Assembly (NCBI GenBank): GCA_000388065.2
Contig: KB932204.1
Direction: 5' to 3' (one strand)
DNA from: Fonticula alba ATCC 38817
Taxonomy: Eukaryota > Protista > Nucleariida
DNA: 64,000 nucleotides
Made by a program: the position numbers and the translations under genes. This document shows positions 48,869-56,156 of this stretch, piece by piece (the stretch's first letter is position 1; each line of letters begins with the position of its first letter). Under the pieces are notes generated by a model. The model did no database searches. It was not told where the DNA came from and was given only the letters and a program-made list of their open reading frames with translations.

Positions 48869-50028
48869 GTCCATCGGTTATCCATGATAGTGAGATTTCT
48901 GTATTACCGCACATCCCCCCCCTCCTCCTCTTTCCTTCCTTCCTTCCACCCTCCTCTGACATTTTCCTCCCCTTTTTAGTGTCCGTGAGATCCAGCATCC
49001 GGCTGATCGCTCGTTCAAGAGCTCCCTTTCTTTTAATAATTGAGCATTTGGGATCGTCGCGATCGGGACATCAGGGGGGGGGGAAGATGCGAGCGCGCAT
49101 TGCGAGGGGGGGGGAGTGAGAGGGGCAAGTTGGGTGGTTTTGATGAAGGCCCAGTGTCTGGTGACCCGGTGCGCCTGTCGGGCGGGGGGGGGCCGGTGCA
49201 TCCCCGATGTCTCTCTGCGCGCACACCTTGCTGTGCACTTCCATAAGAGAGGAGACCCTGCGGCAAGAGAGCGAGACACCTCCTTCTGTGCCCCTAGGAA
49301 GAGAACTATCCACACTCGACAGTGGGAGACACCGAGGAGGCCCGAGCGGAGGATCTCGGCCAGATACACGCGGCCGTGCGTTTCCCCCCCCCCCCCGACC
49401 CCCCCCCCCCCCCCCACCACCCTCTCCCCCATCCCCTAACTCACAACTCCCCACTCTACTTTCTATTTATTTCTTAGTTGTTACTATTCACGTCATGTTT
49501 TTTCCTATTCTCTACTTCTTTTCTTCCTTCTCTCGCTCTCTCTCTCTCTCTTTCTCTCCTTCTCTCTCTCTTNNNNNNNNNNNNNNNNNNNNNNNNNNNN
49601 NNNNNNNNNNNNNNCCCCCCCCCCCCCCCCCCCGAGCAAGGTGCACTTCTTTTTCTATGTAAAGATTTATTTGGGATTGTCGAATTTGCTCTTCGTTTCC
49701 GGACAAGGGCAGCTGTTTTTCCCCTTTCCCACGCACAGCCCAGTTCTTCCTCCTTCTGTCTCCTCGCTCTTGCGCTCTCTGTCCCTCTTCCTTGCCGAGA
49801 CACGCAAGGGGTCTAAATCTCTCCTCGGTCGGCCGGCCGGCCGGCGCCGCGCCCAGGATATGGCCGGGCACAGCAGCACGCGGCAGACCGCCCGCCAACC
49901 GAGGAAGAAGGGATTTCTCCGAGCAACGTAACAAAGAGATCTGGCGCGAGGAAGGACTAAAGGGATCCCCCAGAGGGAGAGAAGGATACACCGGGCGAGT
50001 GTGAGAGGAGACAGATGGCTCACGCGCC

Positions 50029-52680
50029 CTAGGAGGTGGGCGCCGCGAACAGCGGGTTGTCGGCGGTCGTGGTGCGCGACGTGAACAGGGGATTGTTGTT
50101 GTCGGTGCCGCCCAGATCGGCCGCCTGCTTGCTGCTTGCCAGGAGGCCATTCTTGGCGGCGTACTTGACGGCGAAGACGGCTCCGGCGGCCACCAGCCCG
50201 GCGGCGGCCACCGCGCCGACGGCGATGCCGACAATGGCCCCGGTGCCGAGGTTCGAGCAGGCGTCCTCCGGGCGGACACACTGATCGCACGAGTCCACCA
50301 CCATCGGCGGGTTCTGCTGGTCGGCCAGGAACCAATTGCCGCCGCAATCCTGCATGCAGATCTCCCGGTTGGCCTCGACATCGGCGGCCGGGATGCACTG
50401 GCCGCAATCGGTCAGGACCATGTCCCCGCCGAAGCGCCCACTGCAATCCGGCAGGCAGGCCTCGCTCTCCTCCCACTTGCCATCCCAATCGGTCGGCACA
50501 CAGAAGCCGCACGAGTCGAGGGTCTCGAGCTTGAAGCACTCGCCCGTTCCACAGGGGCTCAGGTCCTGGTTGCAGACATATGTCCCGGTGGAGGCGGCCA
50601 CCAGGCCGGAGGCGGCAGCGGCCGCCGGCGATTCGTCGCCCAGGCTGTTGCAGCACATGCCGCACTCGTCGAAAAGCTCGTACTGGTCGACACCGGCCAG
50701 GACCACGTCACCCGGGCACCGGCCACAGCGGTCACGCTCGCGCACCGTGCCGTCCTTGGTCACATCGCAGGCATTGGTCTCCGGGCACTGGTGGCAGGCC
50801 TCGAAGGAGGTGTCCGTGTAGAGGTCATGGCACCGAACCAGGAGCCCGGCCTCGTAGGGGTCCTCCTCCGGCGAGGAGAGGCACCCGCACTCGCGGCCCT
50901 CGGCCATCACCAGCTGGGCATTGAACTTCGGGTCATCCGGGCTGGAGTGGCAGATGCCACACCGGTCGGAGTTCCGGTTGAAGTTGCTCAAGTCCGCGGC
51001 CTGGTGGCACTCGCCGCAGAAGTCCACCGCCGCACGGCGGGCATCCGTCACCAGCAAGTACTTGCCACTGCAATCGGCCGTGCAGGACTCCTCCGAGTTG
51101 TAGCCCGGGGTAATGCGACACAGGCCGCAGGGGTCCAGGTCGGCGTTCCACTCGGCCGAGCCGACCAGCCGGCAGACGCCGCAATCGTCGCGCTCGCTCT
51201 TGGGCTTGGTGTTGGACAGGTGATGGGCCCCGGCGCAATCCTGCACACACCACGGCTCCTCCGAGTCGCTGAGCCGGCAGCGGCCGCACTTGTCCACGAA
51301 GGCCGCTCCGCCCCAGGTCCCGGCGCAGTCCTTCTGGCAGGAGTACTCCTGCTTCGGCTGGGCCGGCATGCACTTGCCGCATGGGTCGACCCAGTGCTGG
51401 GCGCCGCTCTCCGGGGTGTTGGGATTGGCGTCGGCCTTCTCGGCGGCAAACCAAATGCCAGCGCAGTCGCGCTTGCAGCGGGCATGACGCTCGGGCGCCG
51501 CCGAGCCGGCCGCTCCACCGGCTGGCCGGGCGTCGAAGCAGAGCCCGCACTCGTCCAGACGATGGCGCGCCCCGGCCGGGGCCAGGTAATGGTCCCCGGC
51601 GCAGTCGACCAGACACTGGCACTTGTCCGACCCCGGGGGACAGGTGTTTCGATCCTCCAGGCTGCACAGCAGCTGGCCGCAGGGGTCCTTCCCGCGGACG
51701 CCATTGCACTTGCCGCATTCATTCTTGTCGGCATTGGTGCCGCCACAGACGCCGCACTCATCGCGCGCCACCACGCTCTTGGGATCCGAGGTGTACACTT
51801 CGCGGCAGGAGTCCCAGACACATGCCGGGGCCGGGGGTGGTCCCTGCCCACCGGGGCCCGGGGCCACACGATGGCAGGTCCCGCAGGCGTCGACCTCATT
51901 CTCGGGCGCGGTCTTGCCTTCCATGAAGTAGGCCCCGGCGCAGTCCTTCTGGCATTTCTCATGCACGCGGGCGGCCCACTTGCCGGGGCTGGGAGCATAG
52001 CCGGGCATGCAGTTGCCGCATGGGTCGGTCAGGTTGGCCGGCTCCTCGGTGTCCTGGCGGTAGTATTGGTTCTTGCAGTCGCGCTGGCAATCGGTGTGGG
52101 TCTGGCCGCCGGCCGTGCAGAAGCCGCATTGGTCGAGGCTGAAGGCCGGCTCCTCGCCCTGCTGGTACTTGTTGCCCTTGCAGTCGGTGCTGTGGGGACG
52201 ACACGGGGGGGGGTCAGTCATTTTTCCGGGAGCGCGTATGCGGGGGGGGNNNNNNNNNNNNNNNNNNNNNNNNNNNNNNNNNNNNNNNNNNNNNNNNNNN
52301 NNNNNNNNNNNNNNNNNNNNNNNNNNNNNNNNNNNNNTGAGAGTATTTCGCAGGGGGGCCGGTGAGCTTCGAGCTGGCAGCGGCCTCCGATGGCCTTATA
52401 ATATGGGAGGGCTGTGCGGCAGGAGTCGAGCATGTCGTCTCGGGTCTCTCTCTCATACACCTACTATGCACATGCGTGCGTGTGCGTGTGTGTCTCGGGA
52501 ATGCGCAAGAGGGGGTCCCTTGAAGGGGCGCCAACCGGAAATACAATAGGCGAGAGGCTGGCGCCCGGGGGTCTATCCCTCCGCGGAGCATTCGCCGGCG
52601 CCGCTGGCGGCGTTGTCTTCGCACATACACATACACATTTGGACACACTTGCACACTGGGACTCAGGAGACACGATAGCG

Positions 52681-52712
<32 letters not shown>

Positions 52713-55700
52713 GCATGGCACAAGGAGCTACGGCGGGACGGGTTGAGGGACCACACAGGGGTACGTACAGGCATTGGCAATTGGATGTGCAGGTGTCCAG
52801 CGTGCAAAGATTCACCCCGCAGCCATTCTTGCCCATCTTGTACTTCGGGGAGTTGGGGCAGTTGCCACACGGGTCCTTCTGGTAGGTGACCCCCGGGCAC
52901 ATGCGGCAGGCATCGAGATTCTGGTTGAGGTCGGTCACATCGCGGCCGGTGGCCGGGTCGATGCGCTGCTTGACGCAGATGCCGCACACGTCCTGCACAT
53001 AGAAGTCCTCGCCCTCGCGGACCCACTCCTTGCGGCAGTCCTGCTCGCAACGGGCCGGGTTCTTGCGCGAGGTGCACTTGCCGCACTGATCGACGAAGTT
53101 CTCCGACTGGGCCTTGGCACTGTCGTACCACTTGCCGGCGCAGTCCTTGACGCAGGTGTTGGAGCTGGAACGCGGCAGGCACTGGCCGCACTCATTCAGC
53201 ACATTGGCCGGCGTGTCGCCACGACGGTAGCGGGCCCCCTTGCAGTCGGTCAGGCAATTGTCCGGCGGGCTGCTGGCCGGGTGGCACTGGCCGCAGGCGT
53301 CACGGACATTGGCCGGCGAGGTGCCGGTGTACCACTGGCCGGCGCAATCCTGGGCACAGGTGCACTGGTCGGGGCTCTTCTGGCAGAAGGCCGCCTGCTC
53401 CAGGCGACAAAGGGGCACACCGCAGGGGTTGAGCCCGCGCGGGCCATTGCACTCGCCACAGGCGTTCTTCTGCTTGTTCTCGCCCCAGCAGATGCCGCAA
53501 TCGTCCTTGTTCTTGTTGGGGTTGGTGCCGGCCGGCAGGCACTGGCCGCAGTCATCCACAAAGTGCATGGCGGCCTGGCTGGTGCGCCAGGCCCCGGAGC
53601 AGTCCTTCTTGCAGAAGGCCCCCCCATCGACGGTGGTGCATTGGCCGCATTGGTTCTTGCGGGGGGGTTGGACAAAGTGCTCGGACCCGGCAAGGCACTT
53701 GACCGCCAGGCCGGCCTTCCAGCCGGTGGCCAGGTAGTGCGCACGGAAGCCGGCCTTGTCCGAGTCGGAGGTCAGACCGGCGGTGGGGTTGGCCGCGCGA
53801 TAGGCGGCCACATCCGGCTGGCAGGCCTTCAGCGAGATGTTCCACTCGTGCTTCGTGCGGAAGGCCTCGCAGGCGAAGGGCTCCAGGTTGTCCGCGCGGG
53901 CCTTGGTGGCCAGCGCACGGGCATCCTCGCGGAACTTGCTGTCGGCCACCAGGGAGCTGATCGGATCAAACCACGCCGGGCAGATGTCATTCTGCATGTT
54001 GACATTCTTCGGCAGCCCCGAGCGGAAGAAGTTGCCGGAGCAATCCTTTTCGCACCAGCTGCTGGTGGCACCGTCGAGGGTGCAAACGCCGCACTGGTCG
54101 AAGCGGAAGGGGCCGTTGCATGTGCCATTGCAGTCGACCTTGGCCGGGCCGCCGCACACACCCTTGCAATCGAAGACCTGGGGGGGGAGTGGCGGGTTGT
54201 TGGTGGAGCGGGGGCGAGGATTTTCAGCAAGTCCAGTGAGAAGGCCGGCCACGCGAGGAAAGGGCCCCGGAGGCGAGCCGCGGGCCACGGAGGTAACCGT
54301 GGAATGTGCAACATGTCAGTCATCGGGGGAGGGGGTTCTTTCCACTTGGGTATGGGGACTCCCGGCCTGGTGGGGGTCCAGGGAACGGTGCGGGGCGCGG
54401 GTGCCGGGCAAATGGAGCGATGGGGGGGAGAGCGAGACAAACAACAGCCAGGGCCAAGAAAAAAGGCATGGCACCATGGCACGGCCGTCGGTGGCCCCGC
54501 TTGAGGACATGCCACCCGGGCGGCGGGCGCCCCAATTCGGCACCGTACCTTGCCACTATGGCGGACCCCATCGCAGCCGCAGACATCCTTCGGCGGGAGG
54601 CAGGCGTCCTTGGTGCAGGTATACTCCATGCACCGGTCGTCGCACTTGGTCACCACGTCGGTCACCTGGATGAACATGTTCTTGACGAAGTTGTGCGCGT
54701 AGACATCCTGGACGACCTTCTCGATCTGGAACAGACGAATGGTACTGCCGGCATCCAGCATTTGGCCCTGGATGGAATTCCGGGCCAGGGGATCGGCACG
54801 CACGCGCTTGTGCGTGGCGTGCGGGTCGTACCCGGAGAGGTCGCCATTTTCGACATTGAGGTTGGCCTCGCCGAATTGGGCGCTCGTCAGGCAGGTGTTC
54901 TCGTCGTCGAACTTGGAGGGGACGGCCATGAAGACGGTCACCCCGCGGCGGATGAGGATGTCGGCCGTCAGGTCGACCTCCTGCTGGAACTTCTCGAAGT
55001 TGGCCGGGGTCATGGCATTCCGGCCGAGGTTGACGTTGGACTCCGGGGGGCAGAAGAAGCGCCCGGTCGGCTGGCCGGACACCAGGTTGTCCAGCGACAC
55101 CGGCGGATCGCTGTCCTCATCGGTGAAGAGCATCAGCACCGGGTGGGCATCGGCGCGCCAGATGGTGTTGACATTGTGGTCCCGACGGTTGGCCTGGAAG
55201 ACACCGCGAATGGTCTCGAGGGTGCCTTCGTGGCCGCCGTATGTGGAAATCATCGAAATGACCTGCTCAAACTCCTCCAGGGTGTAGTCGTTCAGCGGCT
55301 GGAGGGGGGAATGAGGGGGGGAGGGGGGCACCGGGTGGGGGGTGCGGGACCGGGGGAAGGGCAACCAGTCAGGAACACAGTCATCGGAACGGGGCTCGCG
55401 GCTGCTTGTGCTCGGTGATCGTTGCGATCCGAGAGGATGGCGGCAGGGCGGGACGGGCTTGCCCAACGGATCTGACCCCTTGGTTGGGGGGGTCATCTCG
55501 CCGGAACCGGCCCCCGGACAGGATCAAGGCCAAGTGTGTCGGGGTCAAGTGGAGTGGCTACGCACGGTGAACTTCTTGTCCATGACCGGACCGCGGCCGG
55601 AATAGGTGACGATGGCCACATGGGCGTCGACGTCCGTCTCGGTGAGGAGATTCAGCCAGGTTCGGAGGACTGTGGGGACGGTTAGCGGTGGATGCGACAT

Positions 55701-56156
55701 GCGGCGGGAACCCCATCCGCCCATCAGCTCCCTCTCGGGACATCGATCAGTCGCCTGGGAGAGGCATGCCCCGGGGTCNNNNNNNNNNNNNNNNNNNNNN
55801 NNNNNNNNNNNNNNNNNNNNNNNNNNNNGGGGGGAGGGGGGCGGGGCTTCGAGACCCGGGAAAAGCGCACCATTCTTCACTGCCAGGATGGAGGGGTCCA
55901 TGGACACCGAGACATCGAGCAGGATCAAATAATCGACCTTGGTCCGAGGCGTGACCCCGGCGCACTCGGGGGCATAGCACCGAGGCGGGCCACAGAGGCC
56001 GCCCTTGGGCTGGGCAAGGGCGAGGGCTCGGACACTGGTGGTTCCAATGCTGCAAACCACCAGCAGGGCCAGCAGGCCGAGGGAGACAATGGTTCGCCAG
56101 CCGAAAGGCACCCGGGAGGGGGCAGGGGTGCCGCCGGTGTGGAGTAAGTCCGACAT
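50029..56156 (-). CDS. Type I membrane adhesion-receptor candidate: signal peptide, integrin beta-I-like vWA (MIDAS), Cys-rich repeat stalk, Gly/Ala TM helix, double NPxF tail (integrin-beta/Sib-like)
   Basis: Exons 56156-55871, 55669-55566, 55298-54549, 54177-52769 and 52189-50029 sum to 4710 nt (1569 aa plus stop), with GT..AG ends and matching phases. Hydrophobic N-terminus IVSLGLLALLVVCSIG; YLILLDVSVSM; GGHEGTLE; WRADAHPVLMLFTDEDSD; about 25 [DN]-x-C-G-x-C motifs; TM AIVGIAVGAVAAAGLVAAGAVFAV; tail NNNPLFTSRTTTADNPLFAAPTS*. Confidence 0.85.

What the first reader, a model, noticed from the sequence alone, without database searches (positions are those of the whole stretch)
50029..50240. 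Cytoplasmic tail nearly superimposable on integrin beta-2, with talin/kindlin-type NPxF pair and TTT motif
Seen: NNNPLFTSRTTTADNPLFAA, with NPLF at 50083-50094 and 50047-50058, 12 residues apart and separated by S-R-T-T-T. Established: the human beta-2 tail reads [21 protein letters not shown], with the same 12-residue spacing; the proximal NPxF binds talin, while the distal NPxF and Thr triplet engage kindlin, filamin and 14-3-3. The TM (GAIVGIAVGAVAAAGLVAAGA) is more like the Gly/Ala-rich Sib TM than an animal integrin TM. Inference: the tail is under selection for PTB/FERM-domain binding.
Basis: partly seen in the sequence, partly recalled or inferred. Interest (0 to 1): 0.82.

Follow-up and report, generated by a model that had tools for sequence, protein, structure and literature searches.

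The report
Integrin-beta-like tail of Fonticula receptor
The amoeba Fonticula alba, whose lineage is said to lack integrins, has a surface receptor whose short intracellular tail carries the same paired docking motifs as animal integrin beta tails; this tail is conserved across a family not described in the papers I could search, so it probably links the receptor to the cell's actin machinery.

Summary
Window 50029-50241 (minus strand) encodes the membrane span and 45-residue tail of a five-exon, 1569-aa gene. My gene model is identical to Fonticula alba H696_03181 (XP_009495340.1).

- **Match to integrin beta.** The tail has two NPLF motifs 12 residues apart flanking TTT. Its only PDB match is the integrin beta-2 tail peptide (13/20 identical, E 0.0095). 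It hits Pfam Integrin_b_cyt below threshold (20 bits against 23.4), and only on the distal half of the profile.
- **Not chance.** The F. alba paralogue H696_05029 and 15 unnamed environmental protein clusters share the architecture. It consists of a VWA head, a D-x-C-G-x-C stalk, a G-x3-G-x3-G membrane span and a tail of the form [KR]YAxKNGLxG … NPL[YF]-8 residues-NPL[YF], ending 2-13 (mostly 2-3) residues before the C-terminus. The motif spacing never varies.
- **Selection.** The membrane span and motif module are more conserved than the ectodomain.
- **What does not hold.** TTT is not conserved; only beta-branched residues at linker positions 4 and 6 are. The integrin membrane-proximal motif is absent. 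Kindlins are reported to be animal-only.
- **Untested.** Binding to talin or another FERM protein could not be tested.

The scan had already noted the same kind of tail on other DNA of this genome (s1-065907, s1-065348). I class it as a new variant of a known kind.

The parts
50029..56156 (-). Whole gene: five exons encoding 1569 aa, F. alba H696_03181 / XP_009495340.1 / A0A058Z933
   Evidence: Exon model from splice sites and spliced translation. The model is identical to database protein P0001, which is named.
55871..56156 (-). Exon 1: start codon, signal sequence, CGPxxCY motif and the start of the VWA domain with DxSxS (DVSVS)
   Evidence: The Cys motif and D81/S83/S85 are invariant in the family.
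55566..55669 (-). Exon 2: VWA helix 1 and strand B
   Evidence: Pfam VWA covers residues 77-194.
54549..55298 (-). Exon 3: the rest of the VWA head and the Cys-rich neck
   Evidence: Structure model at mean pLDDT 77.
52769..54177 (-). Exon 4: first part of the D-x-C-G-x-C / DCxG repeat stalk
50245..52189 (-). Exon 5, extracellular part: the remaining stalk repeats
   Evidence: Contigs of the RNA? runs cover 50270-52149.
50167..50241 (-). Membrane span G1500-V1524, a Gly/Ala-rich G-x3-G-x3-G zipper
   Evidence: G1500, G1504 and G1508 are invariant. 77% identical to the paralogue.
50101..50166 (-). Membrane-proximal tail K1525-D1546 with the family motif [KR]YAxKNGLxG; not integrin-like
   Evidence: Alignment A1. 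Y1526, K1529 and G1531 are conserved. Pfam profile positions 1-24 are not matched.
50083..50094 (-). Proximal NPLF (N1549-F1552)
   Evidence: N1549, P1550 and L1551 are invariant in the 10 full-length members. It aligns to NPLF of integrin beta-2.
50059..50082 (-). Eight-residue linker TSRTTTAD (TTT at 50065-50073). The family keeps a beta-branched residue at position 4 in 15 of 17 members and at position 6 in 16 of 17.
   Evidence: Alignment A1. The same pattern is visible in the beta-2, beta-7 and beta-3 tails printed.
50047..50058 (-). Distal NPLF (N1561-F1564)
   Evidence: N1561 and P1562 are invariant.
50029..50046 (-). Last five residues AAPTS and the stop codon; most relatives have 2-3 residues here (range 2-13)

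Best explanation
The stretch encodes the membrane span and cytoplasmic tail of a type I adhesion-type receptor of Fonticula alba. The receptor has a VWA head, a long D-x-C-G-x-C cysteine-repeat stalk, a glycine-zipper membrane span and a 45-residue tail.

The last 23 residues of the tail form a conserved docking module: NPL[FY], eight residues with beta-branched side chains at positions 4 and 6, a second NPL[FY], and then (in most family members) 2-5 residues to the free C-terminus. This is the same layout as the distal half of animal integrin beta tails.

Shown here:
- The module exists and is selected.
- It is specifically integrin-beta-like in sequence.

Inferred:
- The proximal NPLF forms the turn that inserts into the PTB-like F3 lobe of a FERM protein. 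Talin is the most likely partner, as shown for Dictyostelium SibA and animal integrins.
- The linker adds a beta-strand to the partner's sheet.
- The distal NPLF, near the C-terminus, binds a second FERM or PTB adaptor.
- Together these would couple the receptor to actin during crawling, phagocytosis or collective invasion.

The precise likeness to beta-2 (Phe instead of Tyr, and TTT) is specific to F. alba and probably coincidental.
For: - Translation and coordinates.
- Gene model identical to XP_009495340.1 of F. alba.
- Only PDB hit of the tail is the integrin beta-2 tail, 13/20 identical, E 0.0095.
- Pfam Integrin_b_cyt at E 5.7e-4 for this tail and hits for 13 of 17 family tails.
- Family tail profile against PDB: every hit that covers the tail region is an integrin beta (beta-7 E 0.0057, beta-2 0.015, then beta-3 and beta-1).
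- Conservation of both motifs: the 8-residue spacing is kept in all 17 aligned tails, and in 15 of them both motifs read NPx[YF]. Those 15 include the paralogue H696_05029.
- Mean pairwise identity is 0.48 for the motif module and 0.43 for the membrane span, against 0.32 for the head and 0.34 for the stalk. Against the paralogue the figures are 0.60 and 0.77 against 0.23 and 0.34.
- Head context: all 50 top Foldseek PDB hits are integrin beta chains. The top AFDB Swiss-Prot hits are integrin beta-8, -4, -3 and -6. 3 of 10 family heads hit Pfam Integrin_beta.
- Literature: the membrane-proximal NPxY of SibA is essential for talin A binding (PMC9197732), and SibA-talin carries force (PMC12686525).
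Against: - No binding data of any kind exist for this tail.
- I could not verify that F. alba encodes a talin with an F3 lobe.
- All matches to integrin tails fall below Pfam's curated threshold (20 against 23.4 bits) and have marginal E-values.
- The membrane-proximal helix motif and the Trp upstream of the proximal NPxF are absent. From established knowledge of integrin tails, both contribute to talin F3 binding.
- Kindlins are reported as animal-only.
- Short linear motifs of this kind can arise by convergence. Entamoeba Hgl lectin and Acanthamoeba MBP are cited as non-integrin receptors with beta-integrin-like tails.
- VIA-align does not separate the head from other VWA classes: Z is 15-17 for integrin beta, alpha-I, vWF A1 and a bacterial pilus adhesin alike.
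Confidence: 0.6

Rival explanations
1. The two NPLF motifs are membrane-traffic signals. They would be read by PTB-domain clathrin adaptors (Dab2, ARH or Numb type) for endocytosis, or by a sorting-nexin FERM domain (SNX17 type) for recycling, and not by a cytoskeletal linker. This is not exclusive of the main explanation, because integrin tails do both.
For: The conserved position of the distal motif near the C-terminus would suit a sorting adaptor equally well. Surface levels of SibA are controlled by sorting in the endocytic pathway (PMC3279395 abstract).
Against: The classic endocytic form FxNPxY needs an aromatic residue two positions before the Asn. Here that position is N (proximal) and A (distal), and N or variable polar residues across the family. 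The invariant 8-residue spacing with a beta-strand-like linker, and the specific match to integrin beta tails rather than to LDL-receptor-type tails, fit the adhesion-receptor layout better.
Confidence: 0.2
2. The tail is a convergent look-alike on a receptor unrelated to integrins. It would bind a partner that is neither a FERM nor a PTB domain, for example a lineage-specific adaptor that recognises the conserved [KR]YAxKNGLxG plus NPLY unit.
For: The membrane-proximal motif is strongly conserved yet has no counterpart in integrins. No hybrid, PSI or I-EGF domains are detected. The stalk repeats have their best non-family matches in Bacteroidota proteins. VIA-align does not single out integrin beta for the head.
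Against: Three separate parts of the protein point to integrin beta. These are the head, a protein-language-model lead for a family member (score 0.75, a lead only) and the tail. NPx[YF] turns are known mainly as ligands of PTB-fold domains.
Confidence: 0.15
3. The resemblance to integrin beta-2 is a chance match in a low-complexity tail.
For: All E-values are marginal.
Against: About 7e-7 motif pairs are expected per tail. Both motifs and their spacing are conserved in 15 of 17 protein clusters below 50% identity. 13 of 17 tails hit the same Pfam model.
Confidence: 0.02

Closest known systems
Animal integrin beta cytoplasmic tails (Pfam PF08725 Integrin_b_cyt; beta-2, beta-7, beta-1, beta-3)
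   Same: - Single-pass type I receptor with a VWA head carrying DxSxS.
- Tail of about 45 residues.
- Proximal NPL[YF], an 8-residue linker with beta-branched residues at positions 4 and 6, a distal NPx[YF], and a few residues to the C-terminus.
- 13/20 identity to beta-2 over this module.
   Different: - No membrane-proximal integrin motif and no Trp before the proximal motif.
- Its own [KR]YAxKNGLxG motif instead.
- Glycine-zipper membrane span.
- No PSI, hybrid, I-EGF or beta-tail domains detected.
- The stalk is made of D-x-C-G-x-C repeats.
- Pfam gathering score not reached.
Dictyostelium Sib proteins (SibA-E, 'similar to integrin beta')
   Same: By published description, Sib proteins have an extracellular VWA domain, a glycine-rich single membrane span and a tail with two NPxY motifs. 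The membrane-proximal motif binds talin A. They occur in an amoeba without canonical integrins.
   Different: - No Sib sequence was available to the tools, so there is no direct alignment.
- None of the 19 hits with an NPx[YF] near the C-terminus has the length I recall for Sib proteins (about 1900 aa, from memory), and none that I looked up carries a name other than F. alba.
- Sib proteins are absent from the top 30 Swiss-Prot structural matches of the head, which are mostly integrin beta.
- Kang et al. report Sib only in dictyostelids, lacking the three cation sites and a cysteine-rich region.
Amoebozoan 'type I' and Rigifila integrin beta homologues (Kang et al., preprint 10.1101/2020.04.29.069435)
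   Same: Described as vWA plus a stalk motif DXCGXCGGX(3-6)CXGC in several copies, plus an NPXY/F tail, without the LLXXXHDRKE motif. The window protein has 21 D-x-C-G-x-C units, some of which read D-x-C-G-x-C-G-G. It has the same kind of tail and also lacks that motif.
   Different: - Those proteins are described with PSI domains and 3-7 stalk motifs, against far more repeats and no PSI hit here.
- No sequence comparison was possible.
- The same paper states that Holomycota lack integrins.
Integrin-like tails on other amoebal lectins (Entamoeba Hgl, Acanthamoeba MBP)
   Same: These are non-integrin receptors of amoebae whose cytoplasmic tails are reported to resemble beta-2 or beta integrin tails, or to carry NPxY (PMC12686525).
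   Different: Their ectodomains are unrelated lectins. They were not compared here.

Membership tests
Canonical integrin beta | Beta-I type VWA domain with a DxSxS MIDAS | tested here: inconclusive
   DxSxS and further acidic positions are invariant. Pfam calls a generic VWA for all 10 family heads and Integrin_beta for only 3 of 10, not for this protein. The Foldseek top 50 are all integrin beta, but VIA-align gives Z 15-17 to several VWA classes. ADMIDAS and SyMBS were not assessed.
Canonical integrin beta | PSI and hybrid domains flanking the beta-I domain | tested here: not met
   No Pfam PSI_integrin or hybrid match. The VWA starts about 15 residues after a short CGPxxCY motif. The model shows no beta-sandwich.
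Canonical integrin beta | I-EGF stalk and beta-tail domain | tested here: not met
   No EGF_integrin or other Pfam hit on 1190 residues of stalk. The repeats are of D-x-C-G-x-C / DCxG type.
Canonical integrin beta | Membrane-proximal tail motif (KLLxxxHDR[RK]E type) | tested here: not met
   Pfam Integrin_b_cyt aligns only profile positions 25-44 of 44. The family has [KR]YAxKNGLxG instead.
Canonical integrin beta | Two NPx[YF] motifs separated by an 8-residue Ser/Thr-rich linker near the C-terminus | tested here: met
Canonical integrin beta | Pfam Integrin_b_cyt gathering score (23.4 bits) | tested here: not met
   15.7-20 bits.
Canonical integrin beta | Heterodimer with an integrin alpha subunit | not testable with these tools
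   Earlier first-reader notes mention FG-GAP receptors with a KRGFFR-like tail elsewhere in this genome. These notes are unverified.
Dictyostelium Sib | VWA, glycine-rich membrane span and a tail with two NPxY motifs | tested here: met
   The architecture matches the published description.
Dictyostelium Sib | Sequence relatedness to SibA-E | not tested
   No Sib sequence could be obtained through the tools. Indirectly, no protein of the length I recall for Sib (about 1900 aa, from memory) and no named dictyostelid protein appears among the tail-bearing hits, and no Sib appears in the top 30.
Dictyostelium Sib | Tail binds talin through the proximal NPxY | not testable with these tools
   Needs a binding assay or a complex prediction.
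Amoebozoan type I integrin beta (Kang et al.) | vWA, DXCGXCGG-type stalk motif and NPXY/F tail, without LLXXXHDRKE | tested here: met
   Met at motif level only: 21 D-x-C-G-x-C units including DECGVCGG, the tail and absence of the proximal motif. Compared with the description, not with sequences.
LDL-receptor-type endocytic signal | Aromatic residue two positions before the Asn (FxNPxY) | tested here: not met
   That position is N (proximal) and A (distal) here, and N or polar residues across the family.

The most novel reading that the evidence does not exclude
This family may be a true, divergent integrin beta lineage retained in nucleariids, the fungal side of the opisthokonts. If so, integrin beta was not lost at the base of Holomycota. 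[quoted passage not shown] The distal motif would originally have served another FERM or PTB adaptor.
Probability: 0.35. Interest if true: 0.8.

Novelty: new variant of a known kind. Interest (0 to 1): 0.62.

Why it matters
Published accounts say the F. alba genome lacks obvious integrins and Dictyostelium-like adhesion molecules (PMC9097593). They also say Holomycota lack integrins. How F. alba cells grip surfaces and each other during collective invasion is stated to be unknown.

A receptor family whose head, and above all whose tail, follow the integrin beta plan gives a concrete candidate for that missing receptor. It also offers a second non-animal system, besides Dictyostelium SibA, for asking whether talin-type force coupling through a paired NPx[YF] tail is ancestral or convergent. 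A 2025 study names that question as open (PMC12686525).

The comparative data also narrow what matters in the tail. The two motifs, their spacing, two beta-branched linker positions and closeness to the C-terminus are kept. The TTT triplet is not.

Tried and rejected
- **Word-index protein searches.** Searches with the tail region of the window exon and of P0036 found nothing but the query itself. The family profile found no named relatives.
- **ESM Atlas.** The search on the last exon and the search on the tail alone gave only generic single-pass or Cys-rich look-alikes.
- **Chance.** Rejected as an explanation.
- **TTT as a conserved regulatory site.** Rejected.
- **Kindlin as the partner.** Judged unlikely, because kindlins are reported as animal-only.
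- **Talin, kindlin or PTB proteins in F. alba.** Papers and earlier scan notes did not confirm any. The notes list only talin-head-like F0-F1 fusions, FERM proteins and a vinculin, all unverified.
- **Key papers.** Cornillon 2006 and Kang 2021 are not held. I used the Kang preprint instead.
- **Read laying.** The first request failed because of a short piece beside an assembly gap.
- **Broad focal-adhesion literature search.** It returned only animal papers.
- **Accession search.** No paper cites the two F. alba accessions.
- **Origin of environmental relatives.** No organism could be assigned to any of them.
Full report
**What is there.** On the minus strand, window 50029-52189 is the last exon of a five-exon gene. 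The exons are 56156-55871, 55669-55566, 55298-54549, 54177-52769 and 52189-50029. I placed them from GT/AG sites and reading-frame continuity. The spliced product is 1569 aa. It is letter-for-letter identical to database protein P0001, which is hypothetical protein H696_03181 of Fonticula alba (XP_009495340.1, UniProt A0A058Z933, 'VWFA domain-containing protein'). An earlier scan note had named the organism, and this confirms it independently.

The protein contains, in order:
- a signal sequence;
- a short CGPxxCY motif;
- a VWA domain with DxSxS (Pfam VWA);
- a Cys-rich neck;
- about 1100 residues of stalk with 21 D-x-C-G-x-C units;
- a Gly/Ala-rich membrane span (G1500-V1524, window 50167-50241);
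- a 45-residue tail (K1525-S1569).

**The observation.** The tail ends ...DNNNPLFTSRTTTADNPLFAAPTS-stop. They are the only NPx[FY] motifs in the protein. About 7e-7 such pairs are expected per tail, and none occurs in 94,000 residues of other open stretches of the window.

The likeness to integrin beta-2 holds when tested against tool-supplied sequences:
- The only PDB sequence matching the tail at E up to 10 is the beta-2 tail peptide of entry 2jf1. It has 13/20 identities, no gap and E 0.0095.
- Pfam Integrin_b_cyt matches at E 5.7e-4 and 20 bits.

That Pfam score is below the curated 23.4 bits. It covers only the distal half of the profile (positions 25-44 of 44). The membrane-proximal half of integrin tails is not present.

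**Expression.** Contigs from three small 2012 runs flagged 'RNA?' cover 49946-52149 at 100% identity. That span is the tail, part of the 3' UTR and nearly all of the last exon. Nothing real lies on the intron or on the 3.6 kb upstream. The pattern fits 3'-biased cDNA, but depth is about 3 and no splice junction was captured.

**Is the tail conserved?** An exhaustive HMMER search of 1.84 billion cluster representatives with the last exon returned 150 hits at E up to 0.001, the listing limit. Most match only the stalk repeat. Among the best of those are Bacteroidota surface proteins.

Nineteen hits carry an NPx[YF] in the last 70 residues; for two of them (P0075, P0136) this looks incidental. 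The remaining 17 end in the family tail, and I aligned 16 of them (P0138 ends in unrelated sequence), using the full-length paralogue P0151 in place of its fragment P0005. These include a second F. alba protein, H696_05029 (1187 aa). P0075, added to the list from the hit table, has a Gly-rich span but a different tail and was not aligned. All the others whose sources I looked up are unnamed environmental sequences from JGI, Logan, ENA or SRA-read collections.

The full-length members share one architecture: signal, CGPxxCY, VWA with DxSxS, Cys stalk, membrane span and tail.

The alignment of 17 membrane spans plus tails (A1) gives a family consensus:
- G-x3-G-x3-G in the membrane span;
- [KR]YAxKNGLxG just inside the membrane;
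- a conserved Asp followed by G-A-S-N-x;
- NPLY, K-x-x-[TV]-x-[VTI]-x-x, NPLY;
- 2-3 residues to the C-terminus in most members (up to 13 in one).

Both motifs are intact in 15 of 17 sequences. The other two have NSLY or SPLY at the proximal site. The 8-residue spacing never varies.

Mean pairwise identity is 0.48 for the motif module and 0.43 for the membrane span, against 0.32 for the head and 0.34 for the stalk. Between the two F. alba paralogues the figures are 0.60 and 0.77 against 0.23 and 0.34.

**What is and is not integrin-like at family level.**
- 13 of the 17 tails hit Pfam Integrin_b_cyt at E up to 0.1; the best E-value (8.6e-4) and score (19.4 bits, below the 23.4-bit threshold) belong to this window's protein.
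- A profile of A1 searched against PDB finds integrin beta-7 (E 0.0057, aligned from the membrane span to the C-terminus), beta-2 (0.015), beta-7 peptide (0.052), beta-3 and beta-1.
- Every hit covering profile positions 49-74 is an integrin beta. All other hits match only the glycine-zipper membrane span (APP, PsbJ and similar).
- The beta-branched residues at linker positions 4 and 6 are also present in the beta-2, beta-7 and beta-3 tails printed. So is the position of the distal motif a few residues from the C-terminus.

The following are not shared or not conserved:
- TTT occurs in this protein only. The paralogue has T-Q-T.
- The integrin membrane-proximal motif is replaced by a family-specific motif.
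- The Trp that precedes the proximal motif in beta-2 (printed) is absent.
- Both F. alba paralogues use Phe in both motifs. Nearly all environmental relatives use Tyr.

The 'beta-2-like' look of this particular tail is therefore a lineage feature laid over a more general integrin-beta-like plan.

**Context of the rest of the protein.** A model of the head (residues 46-400, ten-sequence alignment) has mean pLDDT 77.
- The 50 best Foldseek matches in PDB are all integrin beta chains.
- In AFDB Swiss-Prot the top matches are integrin beta-8, -4, -3 and -6, with no Sib protein in the top 30.
- TM-scores are about 0.4. VIA-align gives Z 15-17 equally to integrin beta, alpha-I, vWF A1 and a streptococcal pilus adhesin.
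- The fold is therefore certainly VWA, while the beta-I subtype is only suggested.
- Pfam calls a generic VWA in 10 of 10 family heads and Integrin_beta in 3 of 10.
- A language-model search with an environmental member lists only integrin beta clusters among its nearest. The score is 0.75, which is a lead only.
- No PSI, hybrid or I-EGF domain is detected.

The stalk motif resembles the DXCGXCGG… motif that Kang et al. describe for amoebozoan 'type I' and Rigifila integrin beta homologues. Those also have NPXY/F tails and lack the LLXXXHDRKE motif. I could not compare sequences.

**Mechanism.** I favour the tail as an adaptor-docking module that couples the receptor to the actin cortex through the PTB-like F3 lobe of a FERM protein. 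Talin is the first candidate (confidence 0.6). The basis is the specific sequence plan shared with integrin beta tails, together with two published results. The membrane-proximal NPxY of Dictyostelium SibA is essential for talin A binding. The SibA-talin link carries piconewton forces without integrins.

- Shown: the existence, conservation and integrin-beta-like sequence of the module.
- Inferred: the identity of the partners, the roles of the two motifs, and any regulation through the Thr residues.
- Against: there are no binding data, I could not verify a talin in F. alba, and the proximal helix and Trp are missing.

The main rival is a traffic signal for PTB clathrin adaptors or SNX17-type recycling (0.2). 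It is not exclusive of the main explanation. The lack of the aromatic residue of FxNPxY weakens the LDL-receptor-type version. A convergent tail with a non-FERM partner gets 0.15. Chance is excluded.

**Known or new.** Paired NPxY/F tails on VWA receptors are known from integrins, Sib proteins and amoebozoan integrin beta homologues. This is therefore not a new kind of thing. However, papers state that F. alba lacks obvious integrins and Dictyostelium-like adhesion molecules and that Holomycota lack integrins. No held paper cites either F. alba accession.

The family as defined here has no named member outside F. alba. Its definition is a VWA head, a D-x-C-G-x-C stalk, a glycine zipper, the [KR]YAxKNGLxG motif and two NPL[YF] motifs. 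I class it as a new variant of a known kind.

The scan had already met the same kind of tail elsewhere in this genome. Notes s1-065907 and s1-065348 probably refer to the paralogue H696_05029. A follow-up there reached a similar view of head and tail. I treated that as a lead and re-derived everything here.

**Limits.** All three word-index searches were unproductive. Sib and amoebozoan integrin beta sequences were not obtainable. No complex prediction was possible. The origin of the environmental relatives is unknown.

Noticed in passing
window 50245-54177 (-), exons 4-5: The stalk holds 21 D-x-C-G-x-C and 16 DCxG units. Outside the family, the best matches of one repeat unit (query residues about 263-322 of the last exon) are Bacteroidota surface proteins annotated as gliding-motility-associated-like, PKD-repeat or HYR-domain proteins.
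   Followed up: partly
window 55950-56010 (-), residues about 50-70 of P0001: A short motif C-G-P-x-x-C-Y-x(3-5)-C sits directly after the signal sequence and about 15 residues before the VWA DxSxS. Its Cys, Gly and Tyr positions are invariant in all 10 full-length family members. It could be a minimal PSI-like cap or a disulphide staple.
   Followed up: no
window 50167-50241 (-): The membrane span carries an invariant G-x3-G-x3-G glycine zipper. The family profile cross-matches the APP and PsbJ membrane helices in PDB. In Dictyostelium, TM9/Phg1 proteins control the surface level of SibA (PMC3279395), which suggests a similar dependence here.
   Followed up: no
proteins P0019/P0154/P0156 versus P0155/P0157 (environmental homologue cluster): Proteins that differ at only three aligned columns (of 778) upstream of the membrane span and tail carry two different C-terminal tails. 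One has NSLY...NPLY plus a 13-residue extension. The other has NPMY...NPLY plus 3 residues. This looks like alternative last exons or a recent tail swap, reminiscent of integrin beta-1 tail isoforms.
   Followed up: partly
window 52250-52337 and 55779-55828; also 52690-52720: Two assembly gaps (runs of N) lie inside introns 4 and 1 of the gene. Intron 4 also holds a (CT)n microsatellite. The public protein model spans both gaps, and the VWA alignment shows nothing missing across the intron 1 gap.
   Followed up: partly
tails of P0001 and P0151 versus environmental relatives (alignment A1): Both F. alba paralogues have Phe in both motifs (NPLF and NPLF). In the environmental relatives all 15 proximal and 13 of 15 distal motifs end in Tyr (two distal motifs end in Phe). 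This may reflect loss of tyrosine-phosphorylation control in F. alba.
   Followed up: no
locus L001 (JGI contig, 9.8 kb): The environmental family member P0152 is an uninterrupted 2934-nt gene beside a DEAD/GUCT helicase gene on a 55% GC contig. The same protein occurs on 21 contigs from several samples, so its unknown eukaryotic host is common in those environments.
   Followed up: no
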